Shown here one piece after another: positions 24,174-61,074 of a stretch of 64,000 bases of DNA. Below the pieces are notes generated by a model, which saw nothing but the letters and a program-made list of their open reading frames with translations, was not told where the DNA came from and did not search any database. The stretch's first letter is position 1. The number at the start of each line of letters is the position of its first letter. Location: IMG/VR virus record IMGVR_UViG_3300028864_000014, positions 171,319-235,318 of that record; one strand, given 5' to 3'. The translations under genes were made by a program, and so were the position numbers.

Positions 24174-26069
<1,896 letters not shown>

Positions 26070-30989: not shown

Positions 30990-31211
30990 TTAATTAAATT
31001 GATATTCTATTATACTTGGTGGAGCCACATCACAACTAGGTCCAAATGTACTAAGAGTACAAATAATAGGTTTATCTACACTTATACCTAAAAACATCAT
31101 TTCAGGTTTATGTATAATACTAGTTGATAATCCTAAAAAACCCAATTCATGATCATGTGCAGCATTAGTTGATAATCCTAAAAAATTCAATGAAAGGTTA
31201 TTATTCCGCAT
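30990..31211 (-). CDS. module C peptide (ends IIEYQFN)
   Basis: 73 aa; 15-aa repeats FLGLST/FLGLST/FLGISV/FGPSC. Confidence 0.75.
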   Translation of the reverse strand: MRNNNLSLNFLGLSTNAAHDHELGFLGLSTSIIHKPEMMFLGISVDKPIICTLSTFGPSCDVAPPSIIEYQFN

Positions 31212-32735: not shown

Positions 32736-32918
32736 TTAATTAAATTGATATTCTATTATACTTGGTAATGCAGGATCTGTACTTATACCAAAAAATGTTA
32801 TATCACCTGGTACTAATGTTTCAACTGTTATGTTGATAAGTGATATTTCTGCAGGCATACCGCTAACAAATTGAGTGCAAGAAATAAAATCTATTGATAT
32901 GTTATTAATACGTTCCAT
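32736..32918 (-). CDS. module C peptide (ends IIEYQFN)
   Basis: 60 aa; FFGIST..PSIIEYQFN. Confidence 0.75.
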   Translation of the reverse strand: MERINNISIDFISCTQFVSGMPAEISLINITVETLVPGDITFFGISTDPALPSIIEYQFN

Positions 32919-34762: not shown

Positions 34763-37700
34763 TTAGAAAATTATAATCGCATTAGCATTGTCATATCCAG
34801 TTTGTATTGCAATATCTAAAATAACTAAGTCAGTTAAAGCAGGTAAAGTTACTCCAACTAATGTTATTTCATCGTAAGTAATATCACTAATTGAAACAGT
34901 TACTCCTGAACAGTTAGTTGTTAATAATACTCTTGATATTGTTTTATCTGTTATCCATTGAAATCTTTGAGGACTTGGTGTGCTATTTGCTCCAATTTTA
35001 CTTAAAGATAAACTTTGAGGTATAATTGATGAATCAACAGTAATTCCATTTCCGTCAATACAAAGATGAATTTCACCACCATTAATAGGAGTAGGGTAAG
35101 AACCATCATTTTTCTTACAATAATATAATTTTCCTCCTGATATTTCAACAAACTGTCCTACACAATTATTATAAGTACCTCCATTTATCGTAGTAAATGA
35201 AGAAGATAATCCTTCACAATTAGTAAAAGTACCAGAGCAAATTCCATTAAAACTACCGTTATTCCCTTTACAATTTAAAAATGTACCAGTTAAATTATTT
35301 ACTTGAAAAATTAATACAGAATTTACATCTGTAAATGTTCCAGATAATGTATCAATTGAACTTGAAAATAATGGCAAATTATTAGAACTGAATATGTTTT
35401 TGAAAATACCTGAGCAATTAAAAATACCTGAAAACCCAGATCCCATTGTAATATTTATATTCTTAAATGTTCCAGATGCAGTAACATCACCATTAGTAGT
35501 ATCAGCTTGAATTTGTCCAGAGCAATTTTCAATATATAATTCTGGAAAATTTCCTGTTAGTTTTAAGCCACCGTCAATAAAGTTAATACCATTTATTTTT
35601 ATTTTATTATTAGTAATTATAACACCAGAACCACCAATATTTACATCGATATTTCCAGTAGATGAAACTAAATTTATATTTTGAGTATCTAAATTAAGAC
35701 TATCAGTTAGAAAACTATAATATCCAGGATATATAATAATATTAACTGGACTATCTGGTGCTGGTACTATAGCTTTCGCTATATTATACACATTTTGCAA
35801 TTCATTTCCATTTATTCCAGGATTACTATTTCCACCTTTTACTGTTAAAAATTGAGTTCCTATTGTTGGAGCAAAATCACCTCCCCCAATTATTTTTCCA
35901 TAACCGTCAATACATAATATAATTGTACCTCCACTTGAAGGTATTTCAAATGTACCTGGAGTAGTCAATCTACAATTATATAAACTTCCTGTTAATGCTC
36001 CACCTCGTGTAGAGTCACCAAAAGATTTACTTTTTGCTGTACAATTTATAAATGTTCCAGATGCAATACCATCAATTCCAAATGAAGTATTTCCAGCAGT
36101 ACAATTTATAAATGTTCCAGATACATTTGCTCCAACTTCATTTGTTCCAAATGAGAAATCTCCAGAATTACAATTAATAAATGTACCAGATAAAGATGTT
36201 GAAGAAAATCCAGTTTCAGCAGTACAATTTATAAATCTTCCAGATAAATCTCCATTCTCTCCATTAAACAACGCACCGTCTGATGTTATATTTTCAAAAT
36301 GACCAGGAAAGTCAGAAACACCTGATCCAAATGTGTTATTTGTTAATTTTAAATTTTTAAATGTTCCAGATAAAATAGTACTATTATCAATTGTGCTACC
36401 TTTAATTTGTCCTGAACAATTTTCAATCCTTAATCCAGGAAAATTTCCTCTTATTTCTAATCCCATACCTGTAAAATTTATACCAATTAATTTAATATTA
36501 TCTGTGATAATTAATATACCACTATAACCAATTTCAATATCTAATTCCCCTGTTGAAGAAATTAAATTTATATAAGGAGTATCTAAACTAATTAATGATG
36601 TCATTCCATAATAACCAGGATAAATAATTATATTAATTGGACTAATTATTGTTGGATTTAAAGCCTTAGCTATATTATAAACATTCTGTAACTCAGCTCC
36701 ATTTGTTCCAGGATCACTACTGATTCCTTTAACTGTTAAATATTGATTTCCATCTGATGGAGCAAAATCTCCTGCTCCTATTACTGCTCCATAACCGTCA
36801 ATACATAACAGAATAGTACCTCCACTTGAAGGAAGTCCAAATGTACCTGGCGTAGTCAATCTACAATTATATAAACTACCTGTTAATGTTCCACCTTGTT
36901 TAGAATCACCAAAAGATCCAGTATTACCTTTTGCTGTACAATTCACAAATGTTCCAGATGTCATACAATGAGCACCAAATGAAGAATTTCCAGCATTACA
37001 ATTAATAAATGTACCAGACACTTCTATTCCACTATTACCAAATGAATTATCACCAGAATTGCAATTAATAAAAGTAGTTCCAGATGATATAATACAACCT
37101 CCTCCTCCTCCAAATCCAGCATCATCACATGTACAATTTTCAAATGTCGCACCAGATGATATGACAGCTCCTCCTACACCAAATCCGTTTGCAGCATTAC
37201 AATTTTTGAATATACCAGATATAATTTTAGTATCATAAAATAAATTTCCACCTTTATGATATATATTTTCAAAATATCCAGATGCTTCTTGTATATAACC
37301 AAATCCATTACCATTAACTAAATTTATATCTTTAAAAGTTCCAGATAAATTAGTATCTGGATACGTTAAAATATTACCCCCATCTATCATTCCTGAACAA
37401 TTTTCAATCCATAACCCTGGAAAATTTCCAGTGAGTTTTAATCCACTACCTCCAAAAAATATACCTGTCAATTTAATATTATCTGAAATAACAATAGCGC
37501 CAGCAAATTCAATTTTAACATCTAATTCTCCTGTTGCTGATATTAAATTTATATAAGGAGTATCTAAACTAAGTCCATTAGACATTCCGTAATATCCAGG
37601 ATATATAATTATGTTTATAGGATTATTTGAACTCGGATTTATAGATTTTGCTAAATCATATACAGTTTGTAATTCCTCTCCATTTATTCCAGAATCAACA

Positions 37701-38770
37701 TTTTTTCCTTCAACAGTTAAATATTGAGCACCATCAGATGGAGCATAATTAGTTGGAATTCCAACTACATTAGTTGCTGATATATTTGTTATTTTTGATC
37801 CATCTCCACTCATTGTACCACCACTTACAACTAAATTACAATCTACTATTACATATCCAGTACTATTAATAGGTTTTATTGCTTCATAATCTGCATGTCT
37901 TATTGACTTTAATGCATCGCCAACATTATCTATTGTTATATTTGGATTGACACTTATCATATAAGACGTCATTGTTTCAAAATCAGAATTTAAAGGTACT
38001 CTCCAACCATCTGGATTATTTTGTATTAATGTGTTAGCTGCAAATAAGCAATATATTCTACCGTATATAACATTTATATCATTTTGAGTATATCCACTAG
38101 GCATGGTAAAAGGTAAATTAAATATTGCATAATCTTCTATAATATTTTCAATTGGATATTCAGCATAAGCAGGATATTGAGTACTAGTATTATACCACCA
38201 ATCATGATCATCCAAAGTTACTAATGAAGTTGTTGCAGATGATGCATAATCATATCCATTTATAACTCTTAAATTTTCTCTAGTCCAAATTTGAGTACCA
38301 ATTTTAACACAACTATATACATTTCCGTCTATATCTGTGAATCCAGATGAAATTATTTCTCCATCAGATAATAATGTTTCACCTGAAGTCGCTTCACGAG
38401 TTAGTCTTATTGAAAATCCATTATATCCAGACCATTCATTATATGAAATAGTAGATAATTGATTATCTAAAAGTGCAGCATAAAATTTAGTAGATGTACT
38501 ACCTGGTGTTGAAGTTCCAAAATAAGTTGAAAATCCGTTATTAAAATAAACTCCTTGGTTTCCTCTAATACCTGCTGTTACAGCGTCAAAATTATAATAA
38601 TCTTTTCCATATATATTATAATCCCCACTATACCACCAAAGAGGAAATTCAGTTGTAGTTCCAATAGTTGGTGGTACTTTTTCCCAATAACTTGCAGAAC
38701 TACTTCCAGTTAATCCGCTTTCAAATCCTCTAACCCATTCCTGACTAGCTAAATATATTATTTCACTCAT
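34763..38770 (-). CDS. large mosaic fibre/adhesin: LASxEWV tag, Fib_succ_major (FISUMP)-like region, three repeated beta-helix modules
   Basis: YLASQEWV; FTDIDGNVYSCVKIGTQIWTRENL..YGRIY..GWRVP; AP(S/T)xGxQYLTV..NGxELQxVY..IIIYPGYY x3; FINCxAG repeats. Confidence 0.8.
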   Translation of the reverse strand: MSEIIYLASQEWVRGFESGLTGSSSASYWEKVPPTIGTTTEFPLWWYSGDYNIYGKDYYNFDAVTAGIRGNQGVYFNNGFSTYFGTSTPGSTSTKFYAALLDNQLSTISYNEWSGYNGFSIRLTREATSGETLLSDGEIISSGFTDIDGNVYSCVKIGTQIWTRENLRVINGYDYASSATTSLVTLDDHDWWYNTSTQYPAYAEYPIENIIEDYAIFNLPFTMPSGYTQNDINVIYGRIYCLFAANTLIQNNPDGWRVPLNSDFETMTSYMISVNPNITIDNVGDALKSIRHADYEAIKPINSTGYVIVDCNLVVSGGTMSGDGSKITNISATNVVGIPTNYAPSDGAQYLTVEGKNVDSGINGEELQTVYDLAKSINPSSNNPINIIIYPGYYGMSNGLSLDTPYINLISATGELDVKIEFAGAIVISDNIKLTGIFFGGSGLKLTGNFPGLWIENCSGMIDGGNILTYPDTNLSGTFKDINLVNGNGFGYIQEASGYFENIYHKGGNLFYDTKIISGIFKNCNAANGFGVGGAVISSGATFENCTCDDAGFGGGGGCIISSGTTFINCNSGDNSFGNSGIEVSGTFINCNAGNSSFGAHCMTSGTFVNCTAKGNTGSFGDSKQGGTLTGSLYNCRLTTPGTFGLPSSGGTILLCIDGYGAVIGAGDFAPSDGNQYLTVKGISSDPGTNGAELQNVYNIAKALNPTIISPINIIIYPGYYGMTSLISLDTPYINLISSTGELDIEIGYSGILIITDNIKLIGINFTGMGLEIRGNFPGLRIENCSGQIKGSTIDNSTILSGTFKNLKLTNNTFGSGVSDFPGHFENITSDGALFNGENGDLSGRFINCTAETGFSSTSLSGTFINCNSGDFSFGTNEVGANVSGTFINCTAGNTSFGIDGIASGTFINCTAKSKSFGDSTRGGALTGSLYNCRLTTPGTFEIPSSGGTIILCIDGYGKIIGGGDFAPTIGTQFLTVKGGNSNPGINGNELQNVYNIAKAIVPAPDSPVNIIIYPGYYSFLTDSLNLDTQNINLVSSTGNIDVNIGGSGVIITNNKIKINGINFIDGGLKLTGNFPELYIENCSGQIQADTTNGDVTASGTFKNINITMGSGFSGIFNCSGIFKNIFSSNNLPLFSSSIDTLSGTFTDVNSVLIFQVNNLTGTFLNCKGNNGSFNGICSGTFTNCEGLSSSFTTINGGTYNNCVGQFVEISGGKLYYCKKNDGSYPTPINGGEIHLCIDGNGITVDSSIIPQSLSLSKIGANSTPSPQRFQWITDKTISRVLLTTNCSGVTVSISDITYDEITLVGVTLPALTDLVILDIAIQTGYDNANAIIIF

Positions 38771-39192: not shown

Positions 39193-39936
39193 TTATATTC
39201 CAAATCTGGATCTTATAGCAGTAAAATTATTCATAATTTCACTATCATTTAATGCTCTATTATATCTTCTTTGAGTTGCAATATACCCAGAAAAATGCTC
39301 TTGCATTGAATTGTATGCTCCAACATAATGTCCAGATGTATCTGAAAATGGTGTTGCTGGATTATATGGAACAGAATTTGAATTTACTAATTCACCATTT
39401 ATATAAATTCTGAATCCAGTATCACTTAATACTGCTGCTACATATGTCCAGGTATTTAAATATATATGACCACCAGACATCTCTCCATTATTTGTACAAT
39501 AAATCCATAAACTTCCATTATTCTGTACTCTGAATCTATATTGATATCCAAACCCTTTTGAACATATTTGTCTATTATCATTTAAATTATCACAATAAAT
39601 AACAGAATCTAATGTTATGTTGGTATTTAATGAACTAAAATCTGGTGAGACACCAACACCCATTCCTTGTGTTCCGTCAAACCTCATGCTACCTCCTCCT
39701 ATTGTTTGAAATTCATTTCCAGTATTTAGATACGCATTATTTTCTCTTCCTGTTAAATCATACCAAATATTTCCAGATTTAGGATAAGATGCTAGATTTC
39801 CTGCATCCAAATCTAAAACTGTTATTCCAGTTGTAGTGATACCAGTTATAATATCTGCTGATGCCCATAAATTATCTACACCTTTAAATGGTATAATTTC
39901 TTCTGGGTTAAATAATTCTCCGCTATAATATTTCAT
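39193..39936 (-). CDS. LamG/concanavalin A-like jelly-roll virion protein
   Basis: LDLDAGNLASYPKSGNIWYDLTG, WTYVAAV, RIYINGELV, RYNRAL, RSRFGI. Confidence 0.85.
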   Translation of the reverse strand: MKYYSGELFNPEEIIPFKGVDNLWASADIITGITTTGITVLDLDAGNLASYPKSGNIWYDLTGRENNAYLNTGNEFQTIGGGSMRFDGTQGMGVGVSPDFSSLNTNITLDSVIYCDNLNDNRQICSKGFGYQYRFRVQNNGSLWIYCTNNGEMSGGHIYLNTWTYVAAVLSDTGFRIYINGELVNSNSVPYNPATPFSDTSGHYVGAYNSMQEHFSGYIATQRRYNRALNDSEIMNNFTAIRSRFGI

Positions 39937-40811: not shown

Positions 40812-43469
40812 TTATAAATTTGCATCTACAATAACCATTTTATCATAAATTAATTTTTGCTCTCCGTTTGAATTAACAAATAATTCTTTTGTGTAAGTAT
40901 TATAAATATACGTTGATGATGTTAAATCTAAATTAAAATAATTAAAATTGTCACATACAGTATTCATATTAAAATTACTACCAATTATAATATTTTGAAA
41001 ACTACTACCAATTGTGTTATTATTAAAACTATCACCAATAGTATTCTCAGAAAAATTACTACCAACAATATTATTCTTAAAATCTTCTCCAACTGTATTA
41101 GATTGAGAATAATTATTAATAGTATTATTTTTAAAATTATTTCCTACTGTAAATTCACAGCCACTACCGAATGTATTATATTGAAAATTGTCTAATGTTG
41201 TTAAATTACATTGACTTCCAATTGTATTATTTTGAAAATTACTACCGATTGTAAAATTGCATTGTCCAACAAATGTATTATTATAACAATTATCAGAAAT
41301 AGAACCGTTAATCTGACTACCAAAATTATTATTTGAAAATTGACTTCCTATTGTCAAATTACATTGATTTCCAAATACATTATCATAACAATTATCTCCA
41401 ATTGACAAATTACATTGACTACCAAATATATTATTAGAAAATCCTGATCCTCCTAATGACAAATTACATGAACTATTAAAAATATTATTGGAATAATTAT
41501 CACCTAGATTACATTTAGCCTGACTACCAAATGTATTATAACTAAAATAATTACCTAAAATACTATCTACAATAATTCCACCAAATATATTATACTGACA
41601 ATAATTTCCAATTTTGTTACGCACAAAATTGTTTTCAATTGTATTATTCCAAAAATCAGTACCAATTGTATCAAATTGACAATAATTTTTAAATGTATTA
41701 TATTTACTATTATTGCCTATATTAATCGTATTACATTGAATACCAAATATATTACCTTGTCCATTTAATATAGTAATATTTGAAGAGTTGCTTCCAATTG
41801 AATTATTAAAGCAACTACCAGAAAATATATTAAAGCTACATTGATATTCAATAACATTATTACTACAATTACCATCAAATGTATTATTCATACTATAACT
41901 TTCAATCGTATTATTAACATTATTAATACCAAATGTGTTACGAGAACATGAGTTTTTAATGATATTACTATTATTACCATTTCCAAATATATTATTACTG
42001 CACATGTTGCCTATTATATTATCATGAAAACTATTTCCTATTGTATTATATTGACAATCATGATCAATAATATTATCTTTACTATCATTACCAATTATAT
42101 TATAACTAAACTGGTGATTAATATTATTTTGATAAAAAGTAGTTCCAATTGTATTATTATAAAATGAATCTCCAATTGTATTATTATTAAAATTAGTATC
42201 TGTGGTATTATTACGATACTCATTTTTTATATTATTATATTGAAAATAATCTCTGTTTTTATTACTACCAAAATTATTTCCAATTATATTATCTGAAAAA
42301 TAGCTTTTGATATTATTATCTCCAAAATAATTTCCAGTTGTATTTGATACAAAATAATATCCAATACTATTATTTTGAAAACTTTTTCCAATATTATTAA
42401 AAATAAAATTATAGCTAATACTATTCTGATTGAAACTATTTTCTATTGTATTATTTTGAAAATCCATACCAATATTATTATTATAATATTGATTTATAAT
42501 ATTATTAAAAATAAAATTATTTCCAATAATATTATCAAAAATATAATCACCAATATTATTATTTTGAAAAAAATCACCAACACTATTATTATTAAAATAA
42601 TTTCCAATTATATTATTTTGAAAATAACCACCTATGCTATTATTAATAAAATTATTTCCAATAATTTTATTATATTGAAAATAACTTCCAAAAATTATAG
42701 TATTTTTATTGCTTATAATATCACCATTATTGGTATTACTATTATGTTGTTCTATCTTATTAGAATGAGAATAATTATAATTATTAATATCAGACCACAT
42801 ATTATAGTCAGTGTAACCTGTACTACATGAAATGTTTGAATTCCCAATGCTCCATACATTTTCAGTTGGACTCACATAAGACAAGTTATTCCATTTAAAT
42901 TGATTCCAATTATATGAAAAATTATTATCTCCAATAGTATTATTATATAAACAAATATAAATTGATCCATTGTATAAAACAACATCATTTTTTTGATATG
43001 TTGTTCCTGAATTCCAAACATTATTTACAATTATCTGCCATCTTCTAAATTTAACTTGTCTAAAATCAAATGATATATCATTATCTTGAATCGTATCTAT
43101 TCTTCTATAAATATATCCATATTGACAGCCAGGTACCATATTAGAATCATTTCTATAATTATAATATATTATATCCTGAGGATATAAACTTGAATGAGCC
43201 TCAACATTTAATGTATTAAAACTACTTGATATTACCAATAACGGTTCATTTATACCGTAATTAATATCACTTGTGTTTGTTATCTGATGTACTGTTTGAT
43301 AATCAGTAATCAAATATGCTTGGTTAGGAATTAAACTATTCGAGTTAATTAAATTTAGTAAATCATTATAAGTTAAATCTATAACTGATGTTCCGCCAGA
43401 ACCTCCACCTGTGGATCCAGTCAATTGACTATTAACCCACTCTTCACTAGCTAATTGAATATTTATCAT
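40812..43469 (-). CDS. Family F beta-solenoid fibre/adhesin (F5, 885 aa)
   Basis: MINIQLASEEWV; [43 protein letters not shown]; dozens of 9-11 aa NxIGxxF repeats; YTKELFV..YDKMVIVDANL. Confidence 0.8.
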   Translation of the reverse strand: MINIQLASEEWVNSQLTGSTGGGSGGTSVIDLTYNDLLNLINSNSLIPNQAYLITDYQTVHQITNTSDINYGINEPLLVISSSFNTLNVEAHSSLYPQDIIYYNYRNDSNMVPGCQYGYIYRRIDTIQDNDISFDFRQVKFRRWQIIVNNVWNSGTTYQKNDVVLYNGSIYICLYNNTIGDNNFSYNWNQFKWNNLSYVSPTENVWSIGNSNISCSTGYTDYNMWSDINNYNYSHSNKIEQHNSNTNNGDIISNKNTIIFGSYFQYNKIIGNNFINNSIGGYFQNNIIGNYFNNNSVGDFFQNNNIGDYIFDNIIGNNFIFNNIINQYYNNNIGMDFQNNTIENSFNQNSISYNFIFNNIGKSFQNNSIGYYFVSNTTGNYFGDNNIKSYFSDNIIGNNFGSNKNRDYFQYNNIKNEYRNNTTDTNFNNNTIGDSFYNNTIGTTFYQNNINHQFSYNIIGNDSKDNIIDHDCQYNTIGNSFHDNIIGNMCSNNIFGNGNNSNIIKNSCSRNTFGINNVNNTIESYSMNNTFDGNCSNNVIEYQCSFNIFSGSCFNNSIGSNSSNITILNGQGNIFGIQCNTINIGNNSKYNTFKNYCQFDTIGTDFWNNTIENNFVRNKIGNYCQYNIFGGIIVDSILGNYFSYNTFGSQAKCNLGDNYSNNIFNSSCNLSLGGSGFSNNIFGSQCNLSIGDNCYDNVFGNQCNLTIGSQFSNNNFGSQINGSISDNCYNNTFVGQCNFTIGSNFQNNTIGSQCNLTTLDNFQYNTFGSGCEFTVGNNFKNNTINNYSQSNTVGEDFKNNIVGSNFSENTIGDSFNNNTIGSSFQNIIIGSNFNMNTVCDNFNYFNLDLTSSTYIYNTYTKELFVNSNGEQKLIYDKMVIVDANL

Positions 43470-45492: not shown

Positions 45493-46266
<774 letters not shown>

Positions 46267-46267
<1 letters not shown>

Positions 46268-46677
46268 TGACAAAAGAAGAATTAAGTGATTTTATATTGG
46301 AGACATTAAAAAAATGCTATAAAGTTAAACATGAGGATTATCCAAGTATAATTTTTTGGATATATGATGAACAATTCATTAGAAAAATTAAATTAGGCAA
46401 AATAAATAATCAAGACATAAAAATTACAAATGAAATTAACGGAACTTGTATATTTCAACAAGATTTTAAAAAATTAAAATTTCGTTGTAATGATGATATT
46501 TGGACTTTTTTATTCAGATACTATTCCGATGATTACTATGATAATCAGAAATTCATGAAAGATATACTAAAAAATATTACTAATTTAAATATGTATTTAC
46601 CAACAATGAATTCATCAACAGCTAATATATCATTGAAAAATTACAAGAAAATAAGTTTATATTTAAATGATGTATAA
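46267..46677 (+). CDS. Family X paralog, array 3/13
   Basis: same motif set. Confidence 0.85.
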
Positions 46678-47065
46678 AAAAGATTTATATGATTGGTTCT
46701 GGAATAAATATAATTCCTGCTATCAAGTTAAAGTAGAATTATATCCAGATAGTGTATTCTTAGTTTATGACGAAAAATATATAAGAAAACTTAAATTGTT
46801 TAAATTAAATAATACAGAAGAGTTAATTTCAATTAATAATGTTGAAGGAACATTTTTATTTAATCAGGATAATAAATTTAGAATTTTATGGCTGAGTGAA
46901 GAATTGTGGAAGTTCTTTGAAAAAAACTATTCATATGACTACTATGATATTCAAAAACTAATAAAAAAACTACTAAAAGATCATCCAATTTTATTCGATT
47001 ATAATCCTTTACCTGGTATGATTAAAAATATATATGAAAATAGTATTATAAAATCAAGATTATAA
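46667..47065 (+). CDS. Family X paralog, array 4/13
   Basis: same motif set. Confidence 0.85.
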   Translation: MMYKKDLYDWFWNKYNSCYQVKVELYPDSVFLVYDEKYIRKLKLFKLNNTEELISINNVEGTFLFNQDNKFRILWLSEELWKFFEKNYSYDYYDIQKLIKKLLKDHPILFDYNPLPGMIKNIYENSIIKSRL

Positions 47066-47985
<920 letters not shown>

Positions 47986-47989
47986 TAAT

Positions 47990-50626
<2,637 letters not shown>

Positions 50627-50634
<8 letters not shown>

Positions 50635-51091
50635 AGAAGAATTATCAAATTGGTTGATTAGCAAAATTTTATATTGCTATCCAGTAGTAGATAAAGAATG
50701 GAATGATTACGTTTTTTATTTCTATGACGAACAATATATTAGAAAACTTAAATTGTTTAAGTTATATAATATAAAAATAACATCGCCAAATCAAGTTAAT
50801 GGAATATGCTTATTTAGTTTAAATATTAAATATAAAATTATTTACTTTCATTATGAATATGTTTGGAAATTCTTTGAAAATAATTATATAAATAATTATA
50901 TACAAATTGAAAAATTTATAACTGAAATTATAAATGATTATAAACAACTAAATAAGTATTCACCAAAAAAAAATTCACAAGGATTTAGATATCCTGAACT
51001 AATAAGAAGTAAGAAAAATTTAGAAATTAGAGAAGCTGATTGGTCATCTCTACTTCCAAGTTCATATAAAAAATTAATAGTATTGAAATAA
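50627..51091 (+). CDS. Family X paralog, array 13/13
   Basis: same motif set. Confidence 0.85.
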
Positions 51092-53343: not shown

Positions 53344-55305
53344 TTATTTTTGAAATTCATAAGCTCCAATATCAATAGTAGTTCCACTAATTCTATTATT
53401 TGATTTTACATCAAAAACAGATCCATAACCAGAAGTATTATCGCTATTTATTCCGTTGTCTATTAAAAAAGATTGTTCTGAAATATTAAGATTACAAACT
53501 AATACATCATCTACTACTCCTGAATTTAAAGATATTATATCAAAATAAGGACTATTAGTATCTCCACTATTATTAGTAGAAATTGATATATTTCCAATAC
53601 CTGGTCGTTCGTCATTTTCAAATGCAGAATATTCTTCAATACTTGAATTTGTATTAACTACATTATTTTGAGTTCCAGCTATTGATTTATTTCCCCAAAC
53701 TACAGTATTCTTTAATACACAGTTATTTGTACCACCTCCTGAATTTCTGACAACTGAACAATTTATAAGATTAGCAGATTCTGCTCCTCCAACTAGACTT
53801 GCTCCGTAGTTGTTAAAAATTGAGCATGATATTAATGTTCCACCACTTACTCCTCCTACATTACCATTTGAATAATTATTATATACAATTGAACTGATCA
53901 AATTTGAATTATATGATCCTGCTGAGTAACTTAAATAGTTAAGAGATTCATTAGAGTTAATAGAGCAATTTACTAAATTCGAAATAAAAAGTGTTGTTCC
54001 TTTAGCAGCAGTGCTAATGTTTTTATTTATATCAGAATTTGAAAATGATGATAAAAAACCTGCTGAAACACTTCCAACTGTAGAATTATTACTTATAAAG
54101 CAGTTCGTTAGTGATGAATTTATTGCTCCTGCTGATCCACTATATCCATATCGGTCTCCCATATCAGAATTAACTGTTCCAGTATTAACATTACTTGAAA
54201 TTATAGAATTACTAATTGATGAATTTATAACTCCTACTCCACCATTTATATTTCCAATTGATGAATTAAAAGATACTAAGCAGTTATTAAGATTTGCTCC
54301 ATAAACACCACTCCATGATGAATACCAGTAATCGTAAGATTCAATATTATTAATTATTTGACAATTTGATAATATTAATGTACCTGAAGAATGAATTCCT
54401 GCACATAAATATGGTATTGAGTCATTGAAAGAATCCGATATTTGAAATCCGTTTACAACTGATTTTATACCTGAACTACAATAAAGAGTAGTATATGAAG
54501 AAGTTATCTGAGAACCTAATAAATTACCAGACATTATACTTTTATTTTTTGGTACAGGAACAAATAAATCTATATTTCCAGATGGTAATCTTAATATTTC
54601 TTTGTAAGATACCATATCACGCTCATATAGAGAACTTTCAGTACCAATAAATCCTCCGAATATATTTATTCCAGTCTTAAGAAGAAATGATGCAGATCTG
54701 GCATCTCCAATTGTTCTTAATGTAGTAGGTAAATAAGTAATTCCACTTTCAGATCCTTTAACAAAAATTGCATCACCAGAATTTGACAAATCAATAGCTG
54801 TTTGAATATTCTTATACGAATTTGTCCATGATAATCCATCATTAGTATCTAATCCATTATCTCCATCAACATATCTTATAACTGAACCTATTATCTCAAA
54901 TCCATTTTCATCAATTCCAACAGTAGCGATATTTTTATAAATAAGTCCTAGCCTCCAAGTAATGCCATTATCTGATGATGACATTGTATACATATATTCA
55001 CCTACTTCTGTTGGATATTCTAAATTGTCAAATAAAAAATTATTTGGAAAACTTAATGACACATAATCGTTAAGTTTAATTTTTAAATATAATTGAACAT
55101 ATTTACTCATATCAACATTTCCTGTATTTACAGTTACTGTTAATCCTGACGCTGTTGATATATCATATACTTTAATATTCTTGTCTAATATAATAGAACC
55201 TGATACAACTTGTTCAGTGTTATATTGAATTGTGTTACCATCTGTTAAATTTCCTACTATATCAGTTACCCAGTTTTGATTAGCTAAATATATTATTTCA
55301 TCCAT
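53344..55305 (-). CDS. right-handed parallel beta-helix (pectin-lyase-like) tail spike/adhesin
   Basis: IYLANQNWV tag; YVDGDNGLDTNDGLSWTNSYKNIQTAID; GINIFGGFIGTE; terminal RISGTTIDIGAYEF (choice-of-anchor Q-like). Confidence 0.8.
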   Translation of the reverse strand: MDEIIYLANQNWVTDIVGNLTDGNTIQYNTEQVVSGSIILDKNIKVYDISTASGLTVTVNTGNVDMSKYVQLYLKIKLNDYVSLSFPNNFLFDNLEYPTEVGEYMYTMSSSDNGITWRLGLIYKNIATVGIDENGFEIIGSVIRYVDGDNGLDTNDGLSWTNSYKNIQTAIDLSNSGDAIFVKGSESGITYLPTTLRTIGDARSASFLLKTGINIFGGFIGTESSLYERDMVSYKEILRLPSGNIDLFVPVPKNKSIMSGNLLGSQITSSYTTLYCSSGIKSVVNGFQISDSFNDSIPYLCAGIHSSGTLILSNCQIINNIESYDYWYSSWSGVYGANLNNCLVSFNSSIGNINGGVGVINSSISNSIISSNVNTGTVNSDMGDRYGYSGSAGAINSSLTNCFISNNSTVGSVSAGFLSSFSNSDINKNISTAAKGTTLFISNLVNCSINSNESLNYLSYSAGSYNSNLISSIVYNNYSNGNVGGVSGGTLISCSIFNNYGASLVGGAESANLINCSVVRNSGGGTNNCVLKNTVVWGNKSIAGTQNNVVNTNSSIEEYSAFENDERPGIGNISISTNNSGDTNSPYFDIISLNSGVVDDVLVCNLNISEQSFLIDNGINSDNTSGYGSVFDVKSNNRISGTTIDIGAYEFQK

Positions 55306-55406: not shown

Positions 55407-57197
55407 TTAAGCATTTGCACTCACAATAACAGTCTTATCATATATTAACTTTAACTGTGATGAAGAATTACTAAATATTTCTTTTGTATATGAATTATAA
55501 ACATAAGTAGATGATAAAAAATTTGTTCCAGTAACACCACATTGAATAAAATTGTGAGCAAAATTACTTCCTATTGTATTACCACTAAATGTCTCTATTA
55601 TTGAATTATTTGTAAAATAATTTCCTACTGTATTAATACCAAAATAATTTGATATTGAATTATGTCCAAAATCAGTTCCTATTATATTAGTACCAAATCC
55701 ACTTTTTATTGTATTATACATAAAATTAGTTCCTATTGTATTAGCACCAAAATTACTTCCTATTGAATTATATCCAAAATTAGTTCCTATTTTATTATTA
55801 CCAAAATTTCCTCCTATTACATTCAAAGAAGAATTGTTTCCTATCGTGTTAGTACCAAAATTTCCTCCTACCACATTTAAAGTGAAAGCGTTTCCTATTA
55901 TATTATATCCAAAATTGATATCTATAATATTATTAGTGAGTCCATATCCTATAAAATTAAATTGACAATTACGTTCAATTGAATTATAAGTAAAACTATC
56001 ACCTATTACATTAAAATTAAAACTATTTCCTATTGTATTATCAGAAAAACTTCCTCCTATTGAATTAATAGCGAAACTGTTTCCTAATTTATTTTTATTA
56101 AATGCATATGAAATAGAATTATTATAAAAACTATCTCCTATTGTATTAGTATTAAAACTATTTCCTATTGTGTTCTCATAAAAATTGTTTCCTATAGTAT
56201 TATTATAAAAACCAGATCCAAGTGTGACTGAATTATTGTTTGATATTATATTTGTTGATGACTGTTCAATTGAAATATTGAAACTCGATGAATAATCCCA
56301 AAACATATTATAATCTGTATATCCAGTCGAACATGGAATATTAACACTGAACAAAGCCCAACTATTTTTATATGGACTTGTGTAACTTAAATTACCCCAT
56401 TCAAATAATTTCCAAATTGAATCAATGGATGGATCAATTCCAGTCACAAGATTATTCATACAAATATAAATCTTAGTTGTTCCACCACTTAAAACAACAT
56501 CATTCTTATTGTATGTCGTACTATTATTCCAAATGTTAGTAACATTCAATTGAAATCTTCTGAACTTTACCTTTCTAAAATCAAAAGGTATGTCATTAAC
56601 CTGAATTGTGTCTATCCTTCTATAAATATATCCTTTAGTACAACCAGATACCATACTTTGATTATTAGTATAATTATAATAAATAATATCCTGAGGATAT
56701 AATGCTGAATATGCTTCTGGTTTTAATGAATTAATACCACTTGCTGTAACTAATAAAGGTTCTGTTGTTCCTGAACTTAACTCAGTTGTTTTAGGAATTA
56801 CATATACTGTCTGATAATCTGTTATTAAATATTGATTACCTATTGTTAATCCATTTGAAGATATTAAATTAGATAAACTATTATATGTCAAATTTGTAAC
56901 TGTACTTGTACTTCCACTAGGAGAATTACCAGATGTTCCAGATGTTCCTGAACCTGATGTACCAGAAGTTCCTGAATTTCCAGCAGATCCATTCTGTCCT
57001 GAAGTTCCTGACGTTCCTGAATTACCAGAACTTCCTGTGTTTCCAGTTGATCCATTCTGTCCAGATGTGCCTGATCTACCTGCTGTTCCACTAGTTCCAT
57101 TTTGACCTGATGTACCAGACGTACCTGTTGATCCACCTGTTGTTCCAGATAACCTTCCTTCAACCCATTCTTCACTCACCAATTGAATATTTATCAT
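55407..57197 (-). CDS. Family F beta-solenoid fibre/adhesin (F3)
   Basis: MINIQLVSEEWV; first ~190 bp nearly identical to F4. Confidence 0.8.
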   Translation of the reverse strand: MINIQLVSEEWVEGRLSGTTGGSTGTSGTSGQNGTSGTAGRSGTSGQNGSTGNTGSSGNSGTSGTSGQNGSAGNSGTSGTSGSGTSGTSGNSPSGSTSTVTNLTYNSLSNLISSNGLTIGNQYLITDYQTVYVIPKTTELSSGTTEPLLVTASGINSLKPEAYSALYPQDIIYYNYTNNQSMVSGCTKGYIYRRIDTIQVNDIPFDFRKVKFRRFQLNVTNIWNNSTTYNKNDVVLSGGTTKIYICMNNLVTGIDPSIDSIWKLFEWGNLSYTSPYKNSWALFSVNIPCSTGYTDYNMFWDYSSSFNISIEQSSTNIISNNNSVTLGSGFYNNTIGNNFYENTIGNSFNTNTIGDSFYNNSISYAFNKNKLGNSFAINSIGGSFSDNTIGNSFNFNVIGDSFTYNSIERNCQFNFIGYGLTNNIIDINFGYNIIGNAFTLNVVGGNFGTNTIGNNSSLNVIGGNFGNNKIGTNFGYNSIGSNFGANTIGTNFMYNTIKSGFGTNIIGTDFGHNSISNYFGINTVGNYFTNNSIIETFSGNTIGSNFAHNFIQCGVTGTNFLSSTYVYNSYTKEIFSNSSSQLKLIYDKTVIVSANA

Positions 57198-57296: not shown

Positions 57297-58874
57297 TTAT
57301 TCAATGACATCTACTATTGTTGTCACATCATATACTAACTTGTTAAGCCCTGTTGAATCAACATATAAGTTTTTAGTATAGGCTAAATAGATATATGTTG
57401 ATGATGATAAATCTAATCCAGATCCAAAATTATCACATATATTGTTCATAGTAAAATTACTTCCAATTGTATTAGTATTAAAGTTACTTCCAATTGAATT
57501 ATTTTGAAAGTTACTTCCAATTGAATTATAATTAAAATCACTTACAATTGTATTACCACTAAAAATACTTTCAATAGAATTATTATTAAAATTACTTCCA
57601 ATTGCATTTCTTTCAAATCCATATCCAATTGAAGTATTAGTATTAAAATCACTTCCAATTGAATTTTTTTGAAAGTTACTTAATATAGTATTATATTGAA
57701 AGTTGCTTCCTATATTATTATATTGATAATAATTATCCACACTATTAAAATTGAAATTATTTGAAATTGTATTATAGTTGAAATTTGCGCCAATTGTATC
57801 ATTATTGGAAAATAGACTTCCAATTGAATTATTATTAAAATTATTTCCAATATTAGAGTTGGAACTAAAATCTGCTCCAATTAAATTATTATAAAAACTA
57901 CTTGCAATATTATTACTAGTAAAATTACCTCCAATTATATTATTGTAAAAATTATTTGAAATTGTATTATAGTTGAAATTATTTGAAATTGTATTACCAC
58001 TAAAATTAATATCAATATTATTATTTTGAAAATATGATTCAATATTATTAGAGTTAAAATTATCTCCTATGTTGTCATTTTTATTAAAATCACTTCCAAT
58101 TATATTATTGTAAAAATTATTTGAAATTGTATTATGGTAAAAATTATTTGAAATTGTATTACCACTAAAAAATTTTCCAATTGAATTATACATAAAGTAA
58201 TTTTCAATACTATTATCATTAAAATTGTCTCCTATTGTATTACCTGAAAAACCAGTTCCTATTTTATTATTCTTAAAATTGCTTCCTATTGTATTACTAT
58301 TAAAACCATCTCCTATTGTATTATCACGAAAATTACTTCCTAAAATTATAGAATTATTTTGATCTATTCTATAATTTAGTGCTCCTATTTTATTATTAAA
58401 AGCAGTTGAATAATCAACAAAAAAATTATAAACTGTAACTCCACTACTTATATAATTATTTACAATCTTAAAATTTCTAAAATCAAAAGGCATATCATTA
58501 TTCTGTATTGTATCTATCCTTCTATAAATATATCCTTTAGTAGAACCATGTATAACATTAGTATTATTATTGAAATCATAATATATAATATCCTTAGGAT
58601 ATAATGCTGAATATGCTTCTGGTTTTAATGTATTAACTCCACTAGCTGTTACTAATAAAGGTTCAATTATACCAGTGAAAGTATTTCCATAATATGCATC
58701 AATATAAATAGTCTGATAATCTGTAATCAAATACTGACTTCCAATTGTTAATACACTATTATTAATCAAATCGCCCAATTCATTATATGTAACATTAGTT
58801 ACTGAAGAACCACCAGTACCTCCGCCTAATTGTCCTTCAACCCACTCTTCACTTGCTAATTGTATATTTATCAT
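57297..58874 (-). CDS. Family F beta-solenoid fibre/adhesin (F2)
   Basis: MINIQLASEEWV; core lacks the RRWQ insert; very regular 9-aa repeats. Confidence 0.8.
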   Translation of the reverse strand: MINIQLASEEWVEGQLGGGTGGSSVTNVTYNELGDLINNSVLTIGSQYLITDYQTIYIDAYYGNTFTGIIEPLLVTASGVNTLKPEAYSALYPKDIIYYDFNNNTNVIHGSTKGYIYRRIDTIQNNDMPFDFRNFKIVNNYISSGVTVYNFFVDYSTAFNNKIGALNYRIDQNNSIILGSNFRDNTIGDGFNSNTIGSNFKNNKIGTGFSGNTIGDNFNDNSIENYFMYNSIGKFFSGNTISNNFYHNTISNNFYNNIIGSDFNKNDNIGDNFNSNNIESYFQNNNIDINFSGNTISNNFNYNTISNNFYNNIIGGNFTSNNIASSFYNNLIGADFSSNSNIGNNFNNNSIGSLFSNNDTIGANFNYNTISNNFNFNSVDNYYQYNNIGSNFQYNTILSNFQKNSIGSDFNTNTSIGYGFERNAIGSNFNNNSIESIFSGNTIVSDFNYNSIGSNFQNNSIGSNFNTNTIGSNFTMNNICDNFGSGLDLSSSTYIYLAYTKNLYVDSTGLNKLVYDVTTIVDVIE

Positions 58875-58946: not shown

Positions 58947-59561
58947 TTAATTAATATCAGATGTTATATTTAACGATTGATCAAATATTCCCTCACAATA
59001 CATATACTTATTGTCCAATTTTATAATATATAAAATACTATCAATATTTAAATCAGATGATGCAAAATCCTTTATACATTTAAAAGATTCTTTATGAATA
59101 GCATAACTATGAGTGAATAATTTACCTGGAATTTTTTCAATTCCTTTATGTACTTTATCTCTGAATATTCCTTTAATGATATTATTCTCCTTCCTGAATT
59201 GTATCATATTATCAAAATAAAATAAATTCCAATTATTGTTCTTTAAAAAATTAAAACAAATATCTAAATGATAATCTAATTTTTTTTCAATCTCTATGTT
59301 ATCCTGATTAAAACAAACATCATCCTCAAATATAAATATCTTATCATAATCATTTTCTATAGCATCATCTATACAACTAATATGAGATGATTTACAAGAT
59401 TTAGTAGAACTAATATCATCAGTGATAGGAACAATTTTCTTATATTTAGTTATATTTAATATTCTAAACATATTCATTATGTTATCATATCTATCAGTCC
59501 TAATTGGTAAATTTATAAAATATACCATATCAAAATATTCAAAATAATTATGCAGTAGCAT
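58947..59561 (-). CDS. glycosyltransferase family 25
   Basis: VYFINLPIRTDR, SCKSSH, IFIFEDD, WNLFY, THSYAI, IFDQ..SDI. Confidence 0.85.
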   Translation of the reverse strand: MLLHNYFEYFDMVYFINLPIRTDRYDNIMNMFRILNITKYKKIVPITDDISSTKSCKSSHISCIDDAIENDYDKIFIFEDDVCFNQDNIEIEKKLDYHLDICFNFLKNNNWNLFYFDNMIQFRKENNIIKGIFRDKVHKGIEKIPGKLFTHSYAIHKESFKCIKDFASSDLNIDSILYIIKLDNKYMYCEGIFDQSLNITSDIN

Positions 59562-61074
59562 CTACTATTGTTACTTTATCATAAATTAATTTTCTTTGAC
59601 CTGATGAATTAACAAATAAATCTTTAGAATATTGATTATAAACATGAGTGGATGATGTGAAATTTAATCCACTATGATCAAAATTAAAATAATCACAAAC
59701 ATTATTCATTGTAAAATTGCTTCCAATTGTATTACTATTAAAATAACTTCCAATTGTATTATATTGAAAATTACTTCCAATTGTATTACTATTAAAATAA
59801 CTTTCTATACTATTATTTTGAAAATACATTATAATATTATTAAATGTAAATACATTTTCAATCGTATTATTTTGAAAATTACTTCCGATAGTATTATAAT
59901 AAAAATTACCAAAAATAGTATTATTATTAAATAAACTTCCTATACTATTATTTTGAAAAGCATTTCCAATTGTATTATACTGAAAATTATTCAAAATTGT
60001 ATTCCAATTAATCATACCTCCAATTGTATTAAATCTAAAATTTATTCCAATAATATTACTGTCAAAATAATCATCTATTGAATTATTTTGAAAAAAATCA
60101 TCTAATAAATTATCAGAAAAATTGTTTTTTATTGAATTATTATTAAATCCAAAACCAATCAAATTATTGAAAAAATATGAACCTATTTTATTAAAACTAA
60201 ATGAATTAAAAATAGTATTGTTGAAAAAATATGAACCTATTTTATTGTTATTAAATTGATAACCAAATATTACATTATTTGAATATGTAATCATATCTGA
60301 TCCATATATATTTGACATAGGAATTAAAAATTGTTTATCTATAATATTATTAAAACTAGTATTATAATCATTCCAATTACTCCACATATTATAATCTGTA
60401 TAACCAGTAGAACAAGGTAAATATAAAGCATTAAACTGATATCCTACACTTGTCGTACTTACATATGATTTGTTACTTATCATATAAAATGTATTCCAAT
60501 AATTAGTATTACTTAACTGATTACCTGTATTTCCACTTACTATACTAACATACAGAATATTATTTGTATTACCGCTTAAAACAACATTATTACGATTATA
60601 TGTTGTTCCAGAATTCCAAACTTCACTAACATTTATTTGCCATCTTCTAAACTTAACATTCCTAAAATCAAAAGGAATATCATTGTTCTGTGCAGTATCT
60701 ATCCTTCTATAAATGTAACCTTTAGTACATCCAATTACCATAGTCTGATCACTATAGTAATTATAGTAAATTATATCCTGAGGAAATAAACTTGAATATG
60801 CCTCAGGCTTTAATTTATTAACTCCACTTGCTGTAACTAATAAAGGTTCTGTCATTCCACTATTTATATCAGTTGTATTAGGTATCTTATGTACTGTTTG
60901 ATAATCAGTAATTAAATATTGTCCACCAATAGTTAAATTATTAGTATTAATTAATGATGTTAATTCATTATATGTAACATCAGTTACTGAATTTGTGTTG
61001 CCTGTTGATCCACCAGTACCTCCGCCAAACTGTTCCTCAACCCATTCTTCACTTGCTAATTGTATATTTATCAT
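59548..61074 (-). CDS. Family F beta-solenoid fibre/adhesin (F1)
   Basis: MINIQLASEEWV; core, repeats and C-terminus as other F genes. Confidence 0.8.
   Translation of the reverse strand: MINIQLASEEWVEEQFGGGTGGSTGNTNSVTDVTYNELTSLINTNNLTIGGQYLITDYQTVHKIPNTTDINSGMTEPLLVTASGVNKLKPEAYSSLFPQDIIYYNYYSDQTMVIGCTKGYIYRRIDTAQNNDIPFDFRNVKFRRWQINVSEVWNSGTTYNRNNVVLSGNTNNILYVSIVSGNTGNQLSNTNYWNTFYMISNKSYVSTTSVGYQFNALYLPCSTGYTDYNMWSNWNDYNTSFNNIIDKQFLIPMSNIYGSDMITYSNNVIFGYQFNNNKIGSYFFNNTIFNSFSFNKIGSYFFNNLIGFGFNNNSIKNNFSDNLLDDFFQNNSIDDYFDSNIIGINFRFNTIGGMINWNTILNNFQYNTIGNAFQNNSIGSLFNNNTIFGNFYYNTIGSNFQNNTIENVFTFNNIIMYFQNNSIESYFNSNTIGSNFQYNTIGSYFNSNTIGSNFTMNNVCDYFNFDHSGLNFTSSTHVYNQYSKDLFVNSSGQRKLIYDKVTIVDATA

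What the first reader, a model, noticed from the sequence alone, without database searches (positions are those of the whole stretch)
57297..58874. Concertina-like 9-residue beta-solenoid repeats between conserved ends
Seen: F proteins share a ~110-130 aa core and a ~45-aa C-terminus, but the N-x-I-G-x-x-F-x-x repeat block differs greatly in length (proteins 508-885 aa) and in its x positions. F2 contains a recent ~75-bp internal duplication (about 57930-58005 versus 58095-58170). Inference: 27-bp units expand, contract and swap, tuning rod length and the exposed binding surface, comparable to repeat-based antigenic variation.
Basis: partly seen in the sequence, partly recalled or inferred. 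Interest (0 to 1): 0.6.

Follow-up and report, generated by a model that had tools for sequence, protein, structure and literature searches.

The report
Nine-residue solenoid repeats in phage fibres
A very large phage from peat carries eight related tail-fibre-like genes whose middle part is a run of 21 to 62 nine-residue repeats, predicted to fold into a rigid rod, and this rod changes length by whole repeats over evolutionary time; the repeat type is uncatalogued but of an ordinary kind.

Summary
F2 (window 57297-58874, minus strand, 525 aa) holds about 35 tandem nine-residue units with consensus N-x-I-G-x-x-F-x-x. The claimed 75-bp internal duplication exists (72 of 75 bases, offset 165 bp). 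Eight paralogues in this 235-kb peat phage contig share a 115-aa core, the repeat block (21-62 units) and a 40-50 aa C-terminus.

AlphaFold2 predicts a right-handed beta-solenoid. Its best match is a pentapeptide-repeat-type solenoid (Z 17.9, rmsd 2.3 Å). The matched lengths fit 18 residues, or two units, per coil. No Pfam, NCBIfam, PHROG or PDB sequence entry matches the repeat, yet more than 735 metagenomic homologues exist. One cultured relative is the tail fibre of Clostridium phage phiCT453A.

The concertina idea is partly supported:
- Most indels of 9 aa or more between close homologues are whole units (19 of 24).
- A sister phage has two alleles with identical flanks that differ by exactly eight units.
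- Variable (x) positions diverge about twice as fast as the non-repeat parts.

However, F2 itself showed no length variant. Units are only about 60% identical in DNA. No recent swapping between paralogues was seen. This is slow birth-and-death evolution, not a fast antigenic-variation switch. Trimer state and the binding role were not tested.

The parts
57297..58874 (-). F2 gene, 525 aa: adaptor peptide, core domain, nonapeptide solenoid, C-terminal domain
   Evidence: ORF list and translation; identical protein found on 21 peat-metagenome contigs
58827..58874 (-). N-terminal adaptor peptide MINIQLASEEWVEGQL (aa 1-16)
   Evidence: Shared almost letter for letter by five F genes, and in looser form by orf653 and orf1335; short helix at aa 7-15 in the model
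58458..58802 (-). Conserved core domain, aa 25-139
   Evidence: A2 alignment; pLDDT mostly 74-95; tblastn hits to Sphingomonas phage PAU gp99 and the Clostridium phage phiCT453A tail fibre; BFVD top hit H9NBX6 (1048 aa), E 1.3e-10
57420..58394 (-). Nonapeptide array, about 35 units N-x-I-G-x-x-F-x-x (aa 161-485); predicted right-handed beta-solenoid
58096..58170 (-). Copy A of the recent 75-bp duplication
   Evidence: 72/75 identical to copy B at offset 165 bp
57931..58005 (-). Copy B of the recent 75-bp duplication
   Evidence: wider 165-bp repeat at 57920-58235, 82% matching
57300..57419 (-). Conserved C-terminal domain (aa 486-525), low model confidence
   Evidence: A3 alignment; pLDDT 25-55
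59548..61074 (-). Paralogue F_59548, 508 aa, 22 units
55407..57197 (-). Paralogue F_55407, 596 aa, 25 units, with collagen-like tract
   Evidence: 63-bp deletion in the collagen-like tract in locus L016
51125..52870 (-). Paralogue F_51125, 581 aa, 21 units, with collagen-like tract
40812..43469 (-). Paralogue F_40812, 885 aa, 62 units, with CBM5/12-like insert
24174..26066 (-). Paralogue F_24174, 630 aa, 25 units, with T4 gp9/10-type N-terminus and collagen-like tracts
58947..59561 (-). Family-25 glycosyltransferase gene; its start overlaps the 3' end of F_59548 by 14 nt
   Evidence: Pfam PF01755, E 5e-8; the same F-GT25 overlap is seen in the sister phage

Best explanation
F2 is one of eight paralogous tail-fibre-type receptor-binding proteins of a very large peat phage.

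Each protein is modular:
- a short N-terminal docking peptide, of three types in this genome;
- an optional collagen-like spacer;
- a conserved 115-aa core domain;
- an optional carbohydrate-binding-like insert;
- a rod built from nine-residue units;
- a conserved 40-50 aa C-terminal end.

The fold is predicted. Two units appear to make one 18-residue coil of a right-handed, four-sided beta-solenoid resembling pentapeptide-repeat proteins. I infer that Ile3 and Phe7 pack the core, that Asn1 forms a ladder at a turn, and that Gly4 allows the other turn.

Positions 2, 5, 6, 8 and 9 would then lie on the surface. They are rich in Asn, Ser, Tyr, Gln and Thr. I infer that this surface is the long, flat specificity surface, probably for a repetitive host-envelope glycan.

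The evolutionary pattern is shown. Arrays grow and shrink by whole units through homology-mediated duplication or deletion between in-register units, and the surface positions then diverge quickly. This happens on evolutionary time, not as a programmed switch. I infer that several paralogues with different surfaces and lengths widen or hedge host recognition.
For: Phage identity: the contig is a 235-kb IMG/VR virus record. It encodes a baseplate hub with an M23 peptidase, ribonucleotide reductase and an NAD-dependent ligase.

Tail-fibre assignment:
- Collagen-like tracts hit PHROG tail-fibre families.
- Paralogue and homologue N-termini are of T4 gp9/10_N, Mtd_N or Phage_fiber_rpt type.
- The core occurs in the phiCT453A 'tail fiber protein', which lies directly after baseplate J and XkdU. 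That protein also has degenerate 9-aa repeats.

Fold:
- Repeat-block pLDDT is 80-91.
- DSSP shows two short strands per unit, at x2-I3 and F7-x8.
- The best VIA match is the synthetic pentapeptide-repeat solenoid 4yfo (Z 17.9, rmsd 2.3 Å, 194 aa). Natural pentapeptide-repeat proteins follow at rmsd 2.6-3.2 Å.
- 194 model residues span 215 residues of 4yfo, which fits 18 against 20 residues per coil.
- Left-handed helices fit only at rmsd above 11 Å.
- Even-numbered lags give slightly higher x-position identity than odd lags.

Evolution: whole-unit indels, the clean 8-unit allele pair, local duplication and fast x positions.

Glycan link: a CBM5/12 hit in F_40812, and Laminin_G_3 and Fib_succ_major proteins in the same cluster.
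Against: - No virion, adsorption or binding data exist.
Collagen-like tracts imply trimers, and a monomer model cannot exclude an intertwined three-chain arrangement.
- Foldseek found nothing below E 0.1 in the PDB.
- The C-terminal domain, not the rod, could be the receptor-binding tip. It is conserved and poorly modelled.
- Fast x positions could partly reflect alignments that are off by one unit.
- No array-length variant of F2 itself was seen.
Confidence: 0.62

Rival explanations
1. The array is only a rigid spacer. Receptor specificity lies in the C-terminal 40-50 aa domain or in the core and insert. Unit number merely sets reach, and x-position change is relaxed constraint on a surface that binds nothing.
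For: Shaft repeats of many fibres carry no specificity (established knowledge of adenovirus and T4 fibres). The C-terminal domain lies at the distal end and is retained in all eight paralogues. Several orthologue pairs keep exactly the same array length at 95-98% identity.
Against: The C-terminal domain is the most conserved part after the core, whereas receptor-binding tips are usually the most variable part. The x positions diverge about twice as fast as the non-repeat regions, in 14 of 19 pairs. Their composition (Asn, Tyr, Ser, Gln) is typical of sugar-binding surfaces.
Confidence: 0.22
2. The block forms an intertwined trimeric beta-structure (a triple beta-helix with nine residues per face), as in the T4 gp5 C-terminal needle with its eight-residue repeats. 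The monomeric solenoid would then be a prediction artefact.
For: Collagen-like Gly-X-Y tracts in four paralogues imply trimers. N1, I3 and F7 fall on the same side of an extended strand. Some stretches are modelled as 7-residue strands with 2-residue turns. Triple beta-helices with short repeats are known (PMC4576200).
Against: The monomer model is confident (pLDDT 85-91 with only eight sequences). It superposes at 2.3 Å on a solved single-chain solenoid. Even lags exceed odd lags slightly, as expected for a two-unit coil.
Confidence: 0.12
3. The arrays are fast contingency loci. Slippage in the 27-bp repeats produces frequent length variants within a phage population, in the manner of antigenic or phase variation.
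For: One allele pair differs by 8 units with identical flanks. A second pair at 99.7% identity differs by 3 units. A Lentimicrobiaceae contig carries about 17 near-identical units.
Against: Units average 60% DNA identity, so slippage substrates are short; the breakpoint homology was about 21 bp. F2 and its neighbours show no array indel in nine assemblies from different samples. Cluster members all have equal length. Pairs at 95-99% identity mostly have equal length. The contig-level read test was uninformative.
Confidence: 0.04

Closest known systems
Pentapeptide-repeat proteins (Rfr fold: MfpA, Qnr, AlbG, Np275/276, synthetic SynRFR/beta1)
   Same: Right-handed four-sided beta-solenoid. This is the best structural match (4yfo Z 17.9, rmsd 2.3 Å; 2j8k rmsd 2.6 Å). 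The half-unit x5-x6-F7-x8-x9 (commonly S-N-F-x-x) resembles the A(D/N)(L/F)xx pentapeptide.
   Different: The sequence period is 9, not 5. The coil has 18 residues rather than 20, with alternating 4- and 5-residue faces. Asn1 is invariant. There is no Pfam pentapeptide hit. The context is a phage fibre, not a cytoplasmic DNA mimic.
RTX nonapeptide beta-roll (GGxGxDxUx; HemolysinCabind) and the Ca-dependent antifreeze solenoid MpAFP RIV
   Same: Nine-residue unit, two units per 18-residue turn (RTX; PMC3034196). MpAFP 3p4g is the second-best structural match (Z 15.2, rmsd 2.9 Å).
   Different: The consensus has no Gly-Gly or Asp calcium-binding residues. There is no Pfam hit. The core is built from Ile and Phe with an Asn ladder, so no calcium dependence is expected.
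Beta-helical phage tailspikes and tail fibres (P22-type, CBA120 TSPs, Klebsiella and Acinetobacter depolymerases)
   Same: A phage receptor-binding protein built on a right-handed beta-solenoid. Several paralogues occur per genome. N-terminal adaptors are modular.
   Different: Tailspikes have irregular coils of about 22-27 residues with enzymatic grooves. Here the coil is a strict short sequence repeat, with no sign of a catalytic site.
Clostridium phage phiCT453A gp53 tail fibre
   Same: It shares the core domain (42% identity). A 9/18/27-periodic N-x-[FL]-G-x-x-C-type block follows the core. The gene lies after baseplate J and XkdU.
   Different: Its repeats are degenerate and Cys-rich, its N-terminus is a DUF3751 domain, and the phage is a small 42-kb temperate myophage.
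YadA-type head repeats (NSVAIGxxS motif, left-handed parallel beta-roll). Recalled from memory, so a lead only.
   Same: An N-S/T-(x)-I-G motif in a trimeric surface adhesin solenoid.
   Different: Those repeats are 14-16 residues long and left-handed. No Pfam match was found, and none appears among the top 50 structural matches. The model fits left-handed helices poorly.

Membership tests
Pentapeptide-repeat family (Pfam PF00805/PF13599) | Tandem five-residue sequence repeat A(D/N)LXX | tested here: not met
   Autocorrelation peaks at lags 9, 18, 27 and 36; lags 5 and 10 are not among the top lags
Pentapeptide-repeat family (Pfam PF00805/PF13599) | Match to the family profile | tested here: not met
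   No Pfam family at E <= 0.1 for F2 or F_59548
Pentapeptide-repeat family (Pfam PF00805/PF13599) | Right-handed quadrilateral beta-helix fold | tested here: met
   Predicted model only: 4yfo Z 17.9, rmsd 2.3 Å over 194 aa; 2j8k, 2w7z, 6fls and 2xt2 at rmsd 2.6-3.2 Å
RTX / HemolysinCabind nonapeptide beta-roll | GGxGxDxUx consensus with calcium-binding Gly and Asp | tested here: not met
   Consensus is N-x-I-G-x-x-F-x-x; no Pfam hit
Phage tail fibre / receptor-binding protein | N-terminal baseplate or fibre adaptor domain | tested here: met
   PF07880 T4_gp9_10_N, PF18454 Mtd_N and PF22337 at the N-termini of homologues. F_24174 and the paralogue at G000 143364 carry the same gp9/10-type sequence
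Phage tail fibre / receptor-binding protein | Homologue at a tail-fibre position next to baseplate genes in a characterised phage | tested here: met
   phiCT453A gp53, after baseplate J and XkdU
Phage tail fibre / receptor-binding protein | Trimeric assembly | not testable with these tools
Collagen-like tracts in paralogues are indirect support
Phage tail fibre / receptor-binding protein | Presence in virions and a role in adsorption | not testable with these tools
   Uncultured phage from peat metagenomes
Repeat-based contingency / antigenic-variation locus | Near-identical tandem units that slip at high frequency | tested here: not met
   Mean unit-to-unit DNA identity is 0.60 within genes
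Repeat-based contingency / antigenic-variation locus | Copy-number heterogeneity within populations | tested here: inconclusive
   None for F2 or its neighbours in nine assemblies or in the F_59548 cluster. One clean 8-unit allele pair exists in a sister phage. Logan contigs break inside the arrays
DGR-diversified receptor-binding protein (Mtd type) | Reverse transcriptase with a template/variable repeat pair | tested here: not met
   No PF00078 match in the 235-kb contig, which is about a third of the genome. The mismatches in the F2 duplication are not adenine-specific

The most novel reading that the evidence does not exclude
N-x-I-G-x-x-F-x-x is an undescribed class of beta-solenoid repeat. 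It would be a rectangular 18-residue coil made of alternating 4- and 5-residue faces with an Asn ladder. It forms the specificity rod of tail fibres in many environmental phages, including megaphage-size contigs, and its length and surface are adjusted by whole-unit gain and loss.
Probability: 0.45. Interest if true: 0.55.

Novelty: new variant of a known kind. Interest (0 to 1): 0.45.

Why it matters
The family is large: more than 735 proteins, several of them on contigs of 240-710 kb. It has no entry in Pfam, NCBIfam, PHROGs or the PDB. Defining it would allow annotation of receptor-binding proteins in poorly understood environmental jumbo phages and megaphages.

A strictly periodic 18-residue coil with five free surface positions per half-coil would also be an attractive design scaffold. 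It gives a simple natural system for asking how fibre length and surface pattern set host range. It does not change any general concept, because solenoid fibres and unit-wise repeat evolution are already known.

Tried and rejected
- Family and sequence scans of F2 against Pfam, PHROGs, NCBIfam and PDB sequences found nothing for the repeat block. A core-domain profile against the PDB, and the individual core sequences against Pfam, also found nothing.
- Foldseek against the PDB gave no match below E 0.1 for either model. BFVD found only the PAU gp99 core and uncharacterised phage proteins.
- The read-level polymorphism test was uninformative. All runs are held only as Logan contigs, which break inside the arrays. 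Every joint had fewer than 31-32 supporting letters on one side, so none is trustworthy.
- The DGR idea was prompted by Mtd_N-like neighbours in the Atlas. It was rejected for lack of a reverse transcriptase.
- Recent gene conversion between paralogue arrays was not seen.
- A preference for indels in multiples of 18 aa (whole coils) was examined and is not clear.
- The search for related loci with the full alignment failed. The core alignment found only four genome loci, in Lentimicrobiaceae, Ignavibacteriota and Bacillota MAGs, so the host remains uncertain.
- Three literature searches found no description of this repeat.

Full report
**Context.** The window is the last 64 kb of a 235,318-bp IMG/VR virus record. 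It has 24% G+C, and CheckV estimates it to be about one third complete. Outside the window it encodes ribonucleotide reductase, an NAD-dependent ligase, a Lon-like protease and a baseplate hub with an M23 peptidase. It is therefore a tailed phage with a very large genome. All sequencing runs that hold the F2 stretch are peat metagenomes.

**Checking the observation.** F2 is an intact 525-codon ORF on the minus strand at 57297-58874.
- Tandem Repeats Finder reports a 27-bp array at 57452-58340 with 32.5 copies.
- Protein autocorrelation peaks at lags 9, 18, 27 and 36 in all eight paralogues of the genome.
- A register parse gives 35 units in F2 (aa 161-485) and 21-62 units in the paralogues.
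- Asn1 is present in 99% of units, Ile3 in 84%, Gly4 in 62% and Phe7 in 88% (Cys in 9%). Positions 2, 5, 6, 8 and 9 have entropies of 2.7-3.4 bits. The parse uses a matrix trained on the motif, so the Asn1 figure is somewhat inflated.
- The claimed duplication is exact. Window 58096-58170 matches 57931-58005 at 72 of 75 bases, offset 165 bp. The next-best 75-bp self-match is 84%.
- The 115-aa core is 46-64% identical to F2 among the six window paralogues. The last 40-50 residues are conserved in all eight.

Protein length also varies because of collagen-like Gly-X-Y tracts (Pfam Collagen in F_55407 and F_51125) and a CBM5/12-like insert (significant in F_40812) ahead of the array.

**What the proteins are.** The genome has eight paralogues. 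Six lie in the window and two elsewhere, at G000 143364-145169 and 69089-71434. Several lines point to tail-fibre-type receptor-binding proteins.
- The collagen-like tracts hit PHROG tail-fibre families.
- N-termini come in three types. Five F genes share MINIQLASEEWV, which also appears in looser form in the neighbouring orf653 and orf1335. F_24174 and the paralogue at G000 143364 share a T4 gp9/10-type sequence. Near-identical N-termini of the homologues P0003, P0005 and P0006 score above the PF07880 threshold. The third type is also found on a Lentimicrobiaceae contig.
- Other homologues start with Mtd_N or Phage_fiber_rpt.
- The core domain matches Sphingomonas phage PAU gp99 and the annotated tail fibre gp53 of Clostridium phage phiCT453A.
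- gp53 lies directly after baseplate J and XkdU. After its core it has a degenerate block of N-x-[FL]-G-x-x-C type, with autocorrelation peaks at 18, 27 and 9.

This module therefore occupies a classical tail-fibre position in a cultured phage. Presence in virions and adsorption could not be tested.

**Fold.**
- AlphaFold2 on the full protein gave pLDDT mostly 80-90 in the array, apart from a dip at aa 263-286, and mostly 74-95 in the core. The linker and the C-terminal 40 residues scored low.
- DSSP shows two short strands per unit, at x2-I3 and F7-x8. They are separated by a three-residue turn at G4-x5-x6 and a two-residue turn at x9-N1.
- A second model of the last 232 residues reached pLDDT 85-91 in the array.
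- Foldseek found nothing significant in the PDB.
- The exhaustive structural aligner placed a synthetic pentapeptide-repeat solenoid first: 4yfo, Z 17.9, rmsd 2.3 Å over 194 residues.
- The calcium-dependent antifreeze solenoid 3p4g came next (Z 15.2). Natural pentapeptide-repeat proteins followed at rmsd 2.6-3.2 Å and nearly full coverage.
- Left-handed helices fitted only at rmsd above 11 Å.
- 194 model residues cover 215 residues of a protein with 20 residues per coil. That equals about 10.8 coils on both sides if the model has 18 residues per coil.
- Identity at x positions is slightly higher at even lags than at neighbouring odd lags.

I conclude, as a prediction, that the block is a right-handed four-sided solenoid with two units per coil, with Ile3 and Phe7 inside and an Asn1 ladder. 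At 4.8 Å per coil (established for beta-solenoids), 21-62 units correspond to rods of roughly 5-15 nm.

**Is it known?** Pfam-A, NCBIfam, PHROGs and PDB sequences give no hit to the block. Even so, the word-based protein search found 735 proteins at E <= 1e-5 among the 8000 candidates it scored. Almost all are unnamed. Several lie on contigs of 242-711 kb, and most carry dozens of motif copies. Atlas neighbours are unnamed clusters of phage and Bacteroidota origin. Three literature searches found no description. By fold it resembles pentapeptide-repeat proteins, and by period it resembles RTX repeats (PMC3034196). It fails the sequence definitions of both.

**Testing the concertina inference.**

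*Within this phage population.* Nine other assemblies carry the same locus with at most about 0.1% mismatches (seven at 99.98-100%). None has an indel in a nonapeptide array. The only indel is a 63-bp in-frame deletion in the collagen-like tract of F_55407 in locus L016. The 90% cluster of F_59548 has four members, all 508 aa. The look-up by identity can only find identical F2 proteins, so this test is biased towards finding sameness. Laying Logan contigs on the region was uninformative, because the contigs break inside the arrays and every joint had too little support.

*Across the family.* The picture is different.
- Of 24 in-array gaps of 9 aa or more between close homologues, 19 are multiples of nine.
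- P0009 and P0020 are identical apart from 72 residues. Their loci share 4179 and 3671 identical flanking bases and differ by a clean 216-bp, eight-unit indel. Its breakpoints lie in a 21-bp stretch that is 20/21 identical between two in-register units. The shorter allele occurs on four contigs from separate assemblies, so an assembly artefact is unlikely.
- P0018 and P0029 (99.7% identical) differ by three units, plus 72 aa of collagen-like tract.
- Within this genome, the nearest relative of a unit lies in the same gene 66 times of 198, against 26 expected. Several genes hold 26-27 of 27 identical unit pairs.
- A Lentimicrobiaceae contig carries about 17 almost identical NTIGNGFYY units.

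*Against a fast switch.* Units average only 60% DNA identity. Orthologue pairs at 95-99% identity usually have equal length. No recent exchange between paralogue arrays is visible. No reverse transcriptase was found.

**Variable positions.** In 19 independent pairs of close homologues, scaffold positions differ at 6%, x positions at 33% and non-repeat regions at 17%. The x positions exceed the non-repeat regions in 14 pairs, including gap-free pairs such as P0065/P0120 (13% against 4%). Alignments that are off by one unit could inflate this figure in gapped pairs. The refutation criterion 'x positions conserved between orthologues' is not met.

**Mechanism.** Shown: modular architecture, strict periodicity, whole-unit indels through short in-register homology, local duplication and fast-changing x positions. 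Predicted: the solenoid fold. Inferred: the rod surface is the specificity determinant for a repetitive envelope glycan, rod length is adjusted in coil steps, and eight paralogues broaden host recognition. The main rival is that the rod is only a spacer and that the conserved C-terminal domain binds the receptor.

**Verdict.** This is a real and neatly organised repeat family, uncatalogued and widespread. It is a new variant of a known kind, the beta-solenoid phage fibre. The analogy with antigenic variation is not supported.

Noticed in passing
window 45493-51091 (+): Thirteen tandem paralogous small ORFs (116-168 aa, all starting M.KEELS.WF..KFN.CY). All 78 pairs are significant by blastp. 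The two members scanned gave no significant Pfam match.
   Followed up: partly
window 58947-59561 (-); also L025 5048-5686: A family-25 glycosyltransferase gene whose start overlaps the 3' end of an F gene by 14 nt. The same arrangement occurs in a sister phage, which suggests coupled expression and possibly glycosylation of the fibre.
   Followed up: partly
window about 57011-57016 (F_55407 collagen-like tract); L016: A 63-bp in-frame deletion in the Gly-X-Y tract in one peat assembly. It is the only length polymorphism seen in this phage population. Logan contigs hint at a further 117-bp variant, but with weak support.
   Followed up: partly
L025 4175-4390 versus L026: Two alleles of a sister-phage F gene (686 and 614 aa) differ only by a clean 216-bp eight-unit indel between 21-bp near-identical in-register stretches. 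The flanks are identical over 7.8 kb.
   Followed up: yes
window 53344-55305 (-) and 34763-38770 (-): Two unrelated large proteins carry an N-terminal peptide (IIYLA[SN]Q.WV) resembling that of the F proteins. One is a 653-aa protein with no family or fold assignment. The other is a 1335-aa protein with Fib_succ_major and, by eye, three internal copies of roughly 330 aa. The shared peptide suggests a common docking site.
   Followed up: partly
window 28991-30703, 31201-32712, 32918-34495 (-): Three adjacent ORFs of 503-570 aa that look paralogous by eye (shared motifs such as NVNSDGSDD and IIPYD; not aligned). No significant Pfam match for any, and no PHROG match for the two that were scanned. 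A Laminin_G_3 lectin-like protein lies nearby at 39193-39936.
   Followed up: partly
L021 3125-5305: A Lentimicrobiaceae MAG contig (26% G+C) encodes a homologue with about 17 nearly identical NTIGNGFYY units, that is, a recently expanded or homogenised array. Its N-terminus is of the third type seen in the paralogue at G000 69089.
   Followed up: partly
L023 3500-5665: The Clostridium phage phiCT453A tail fibre gp53 holds the same core domain, followed by degenerate Cys-rich nine-residue repeats. A Bacillota MAG locus (L022) has a cleaner N-T-F-G-S-x-C-x-x version.
   Followed up: partly
window 59911-60006 (F_59548) in L010 and L011: Of the 12 SNP differences listed across the eight loci compared base by base, six lie in F_59548, including W357S and F388L inside the array, and four lie in the GT25 gene.
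   Followed up: no
window 1-64000: No tRNA genes were found. Strand and GC-skew switches occur near 24 kb and 46 kb. A tRNA nucleotidyltransferase-like gene lies at 4251-5033.
   Followed up: no
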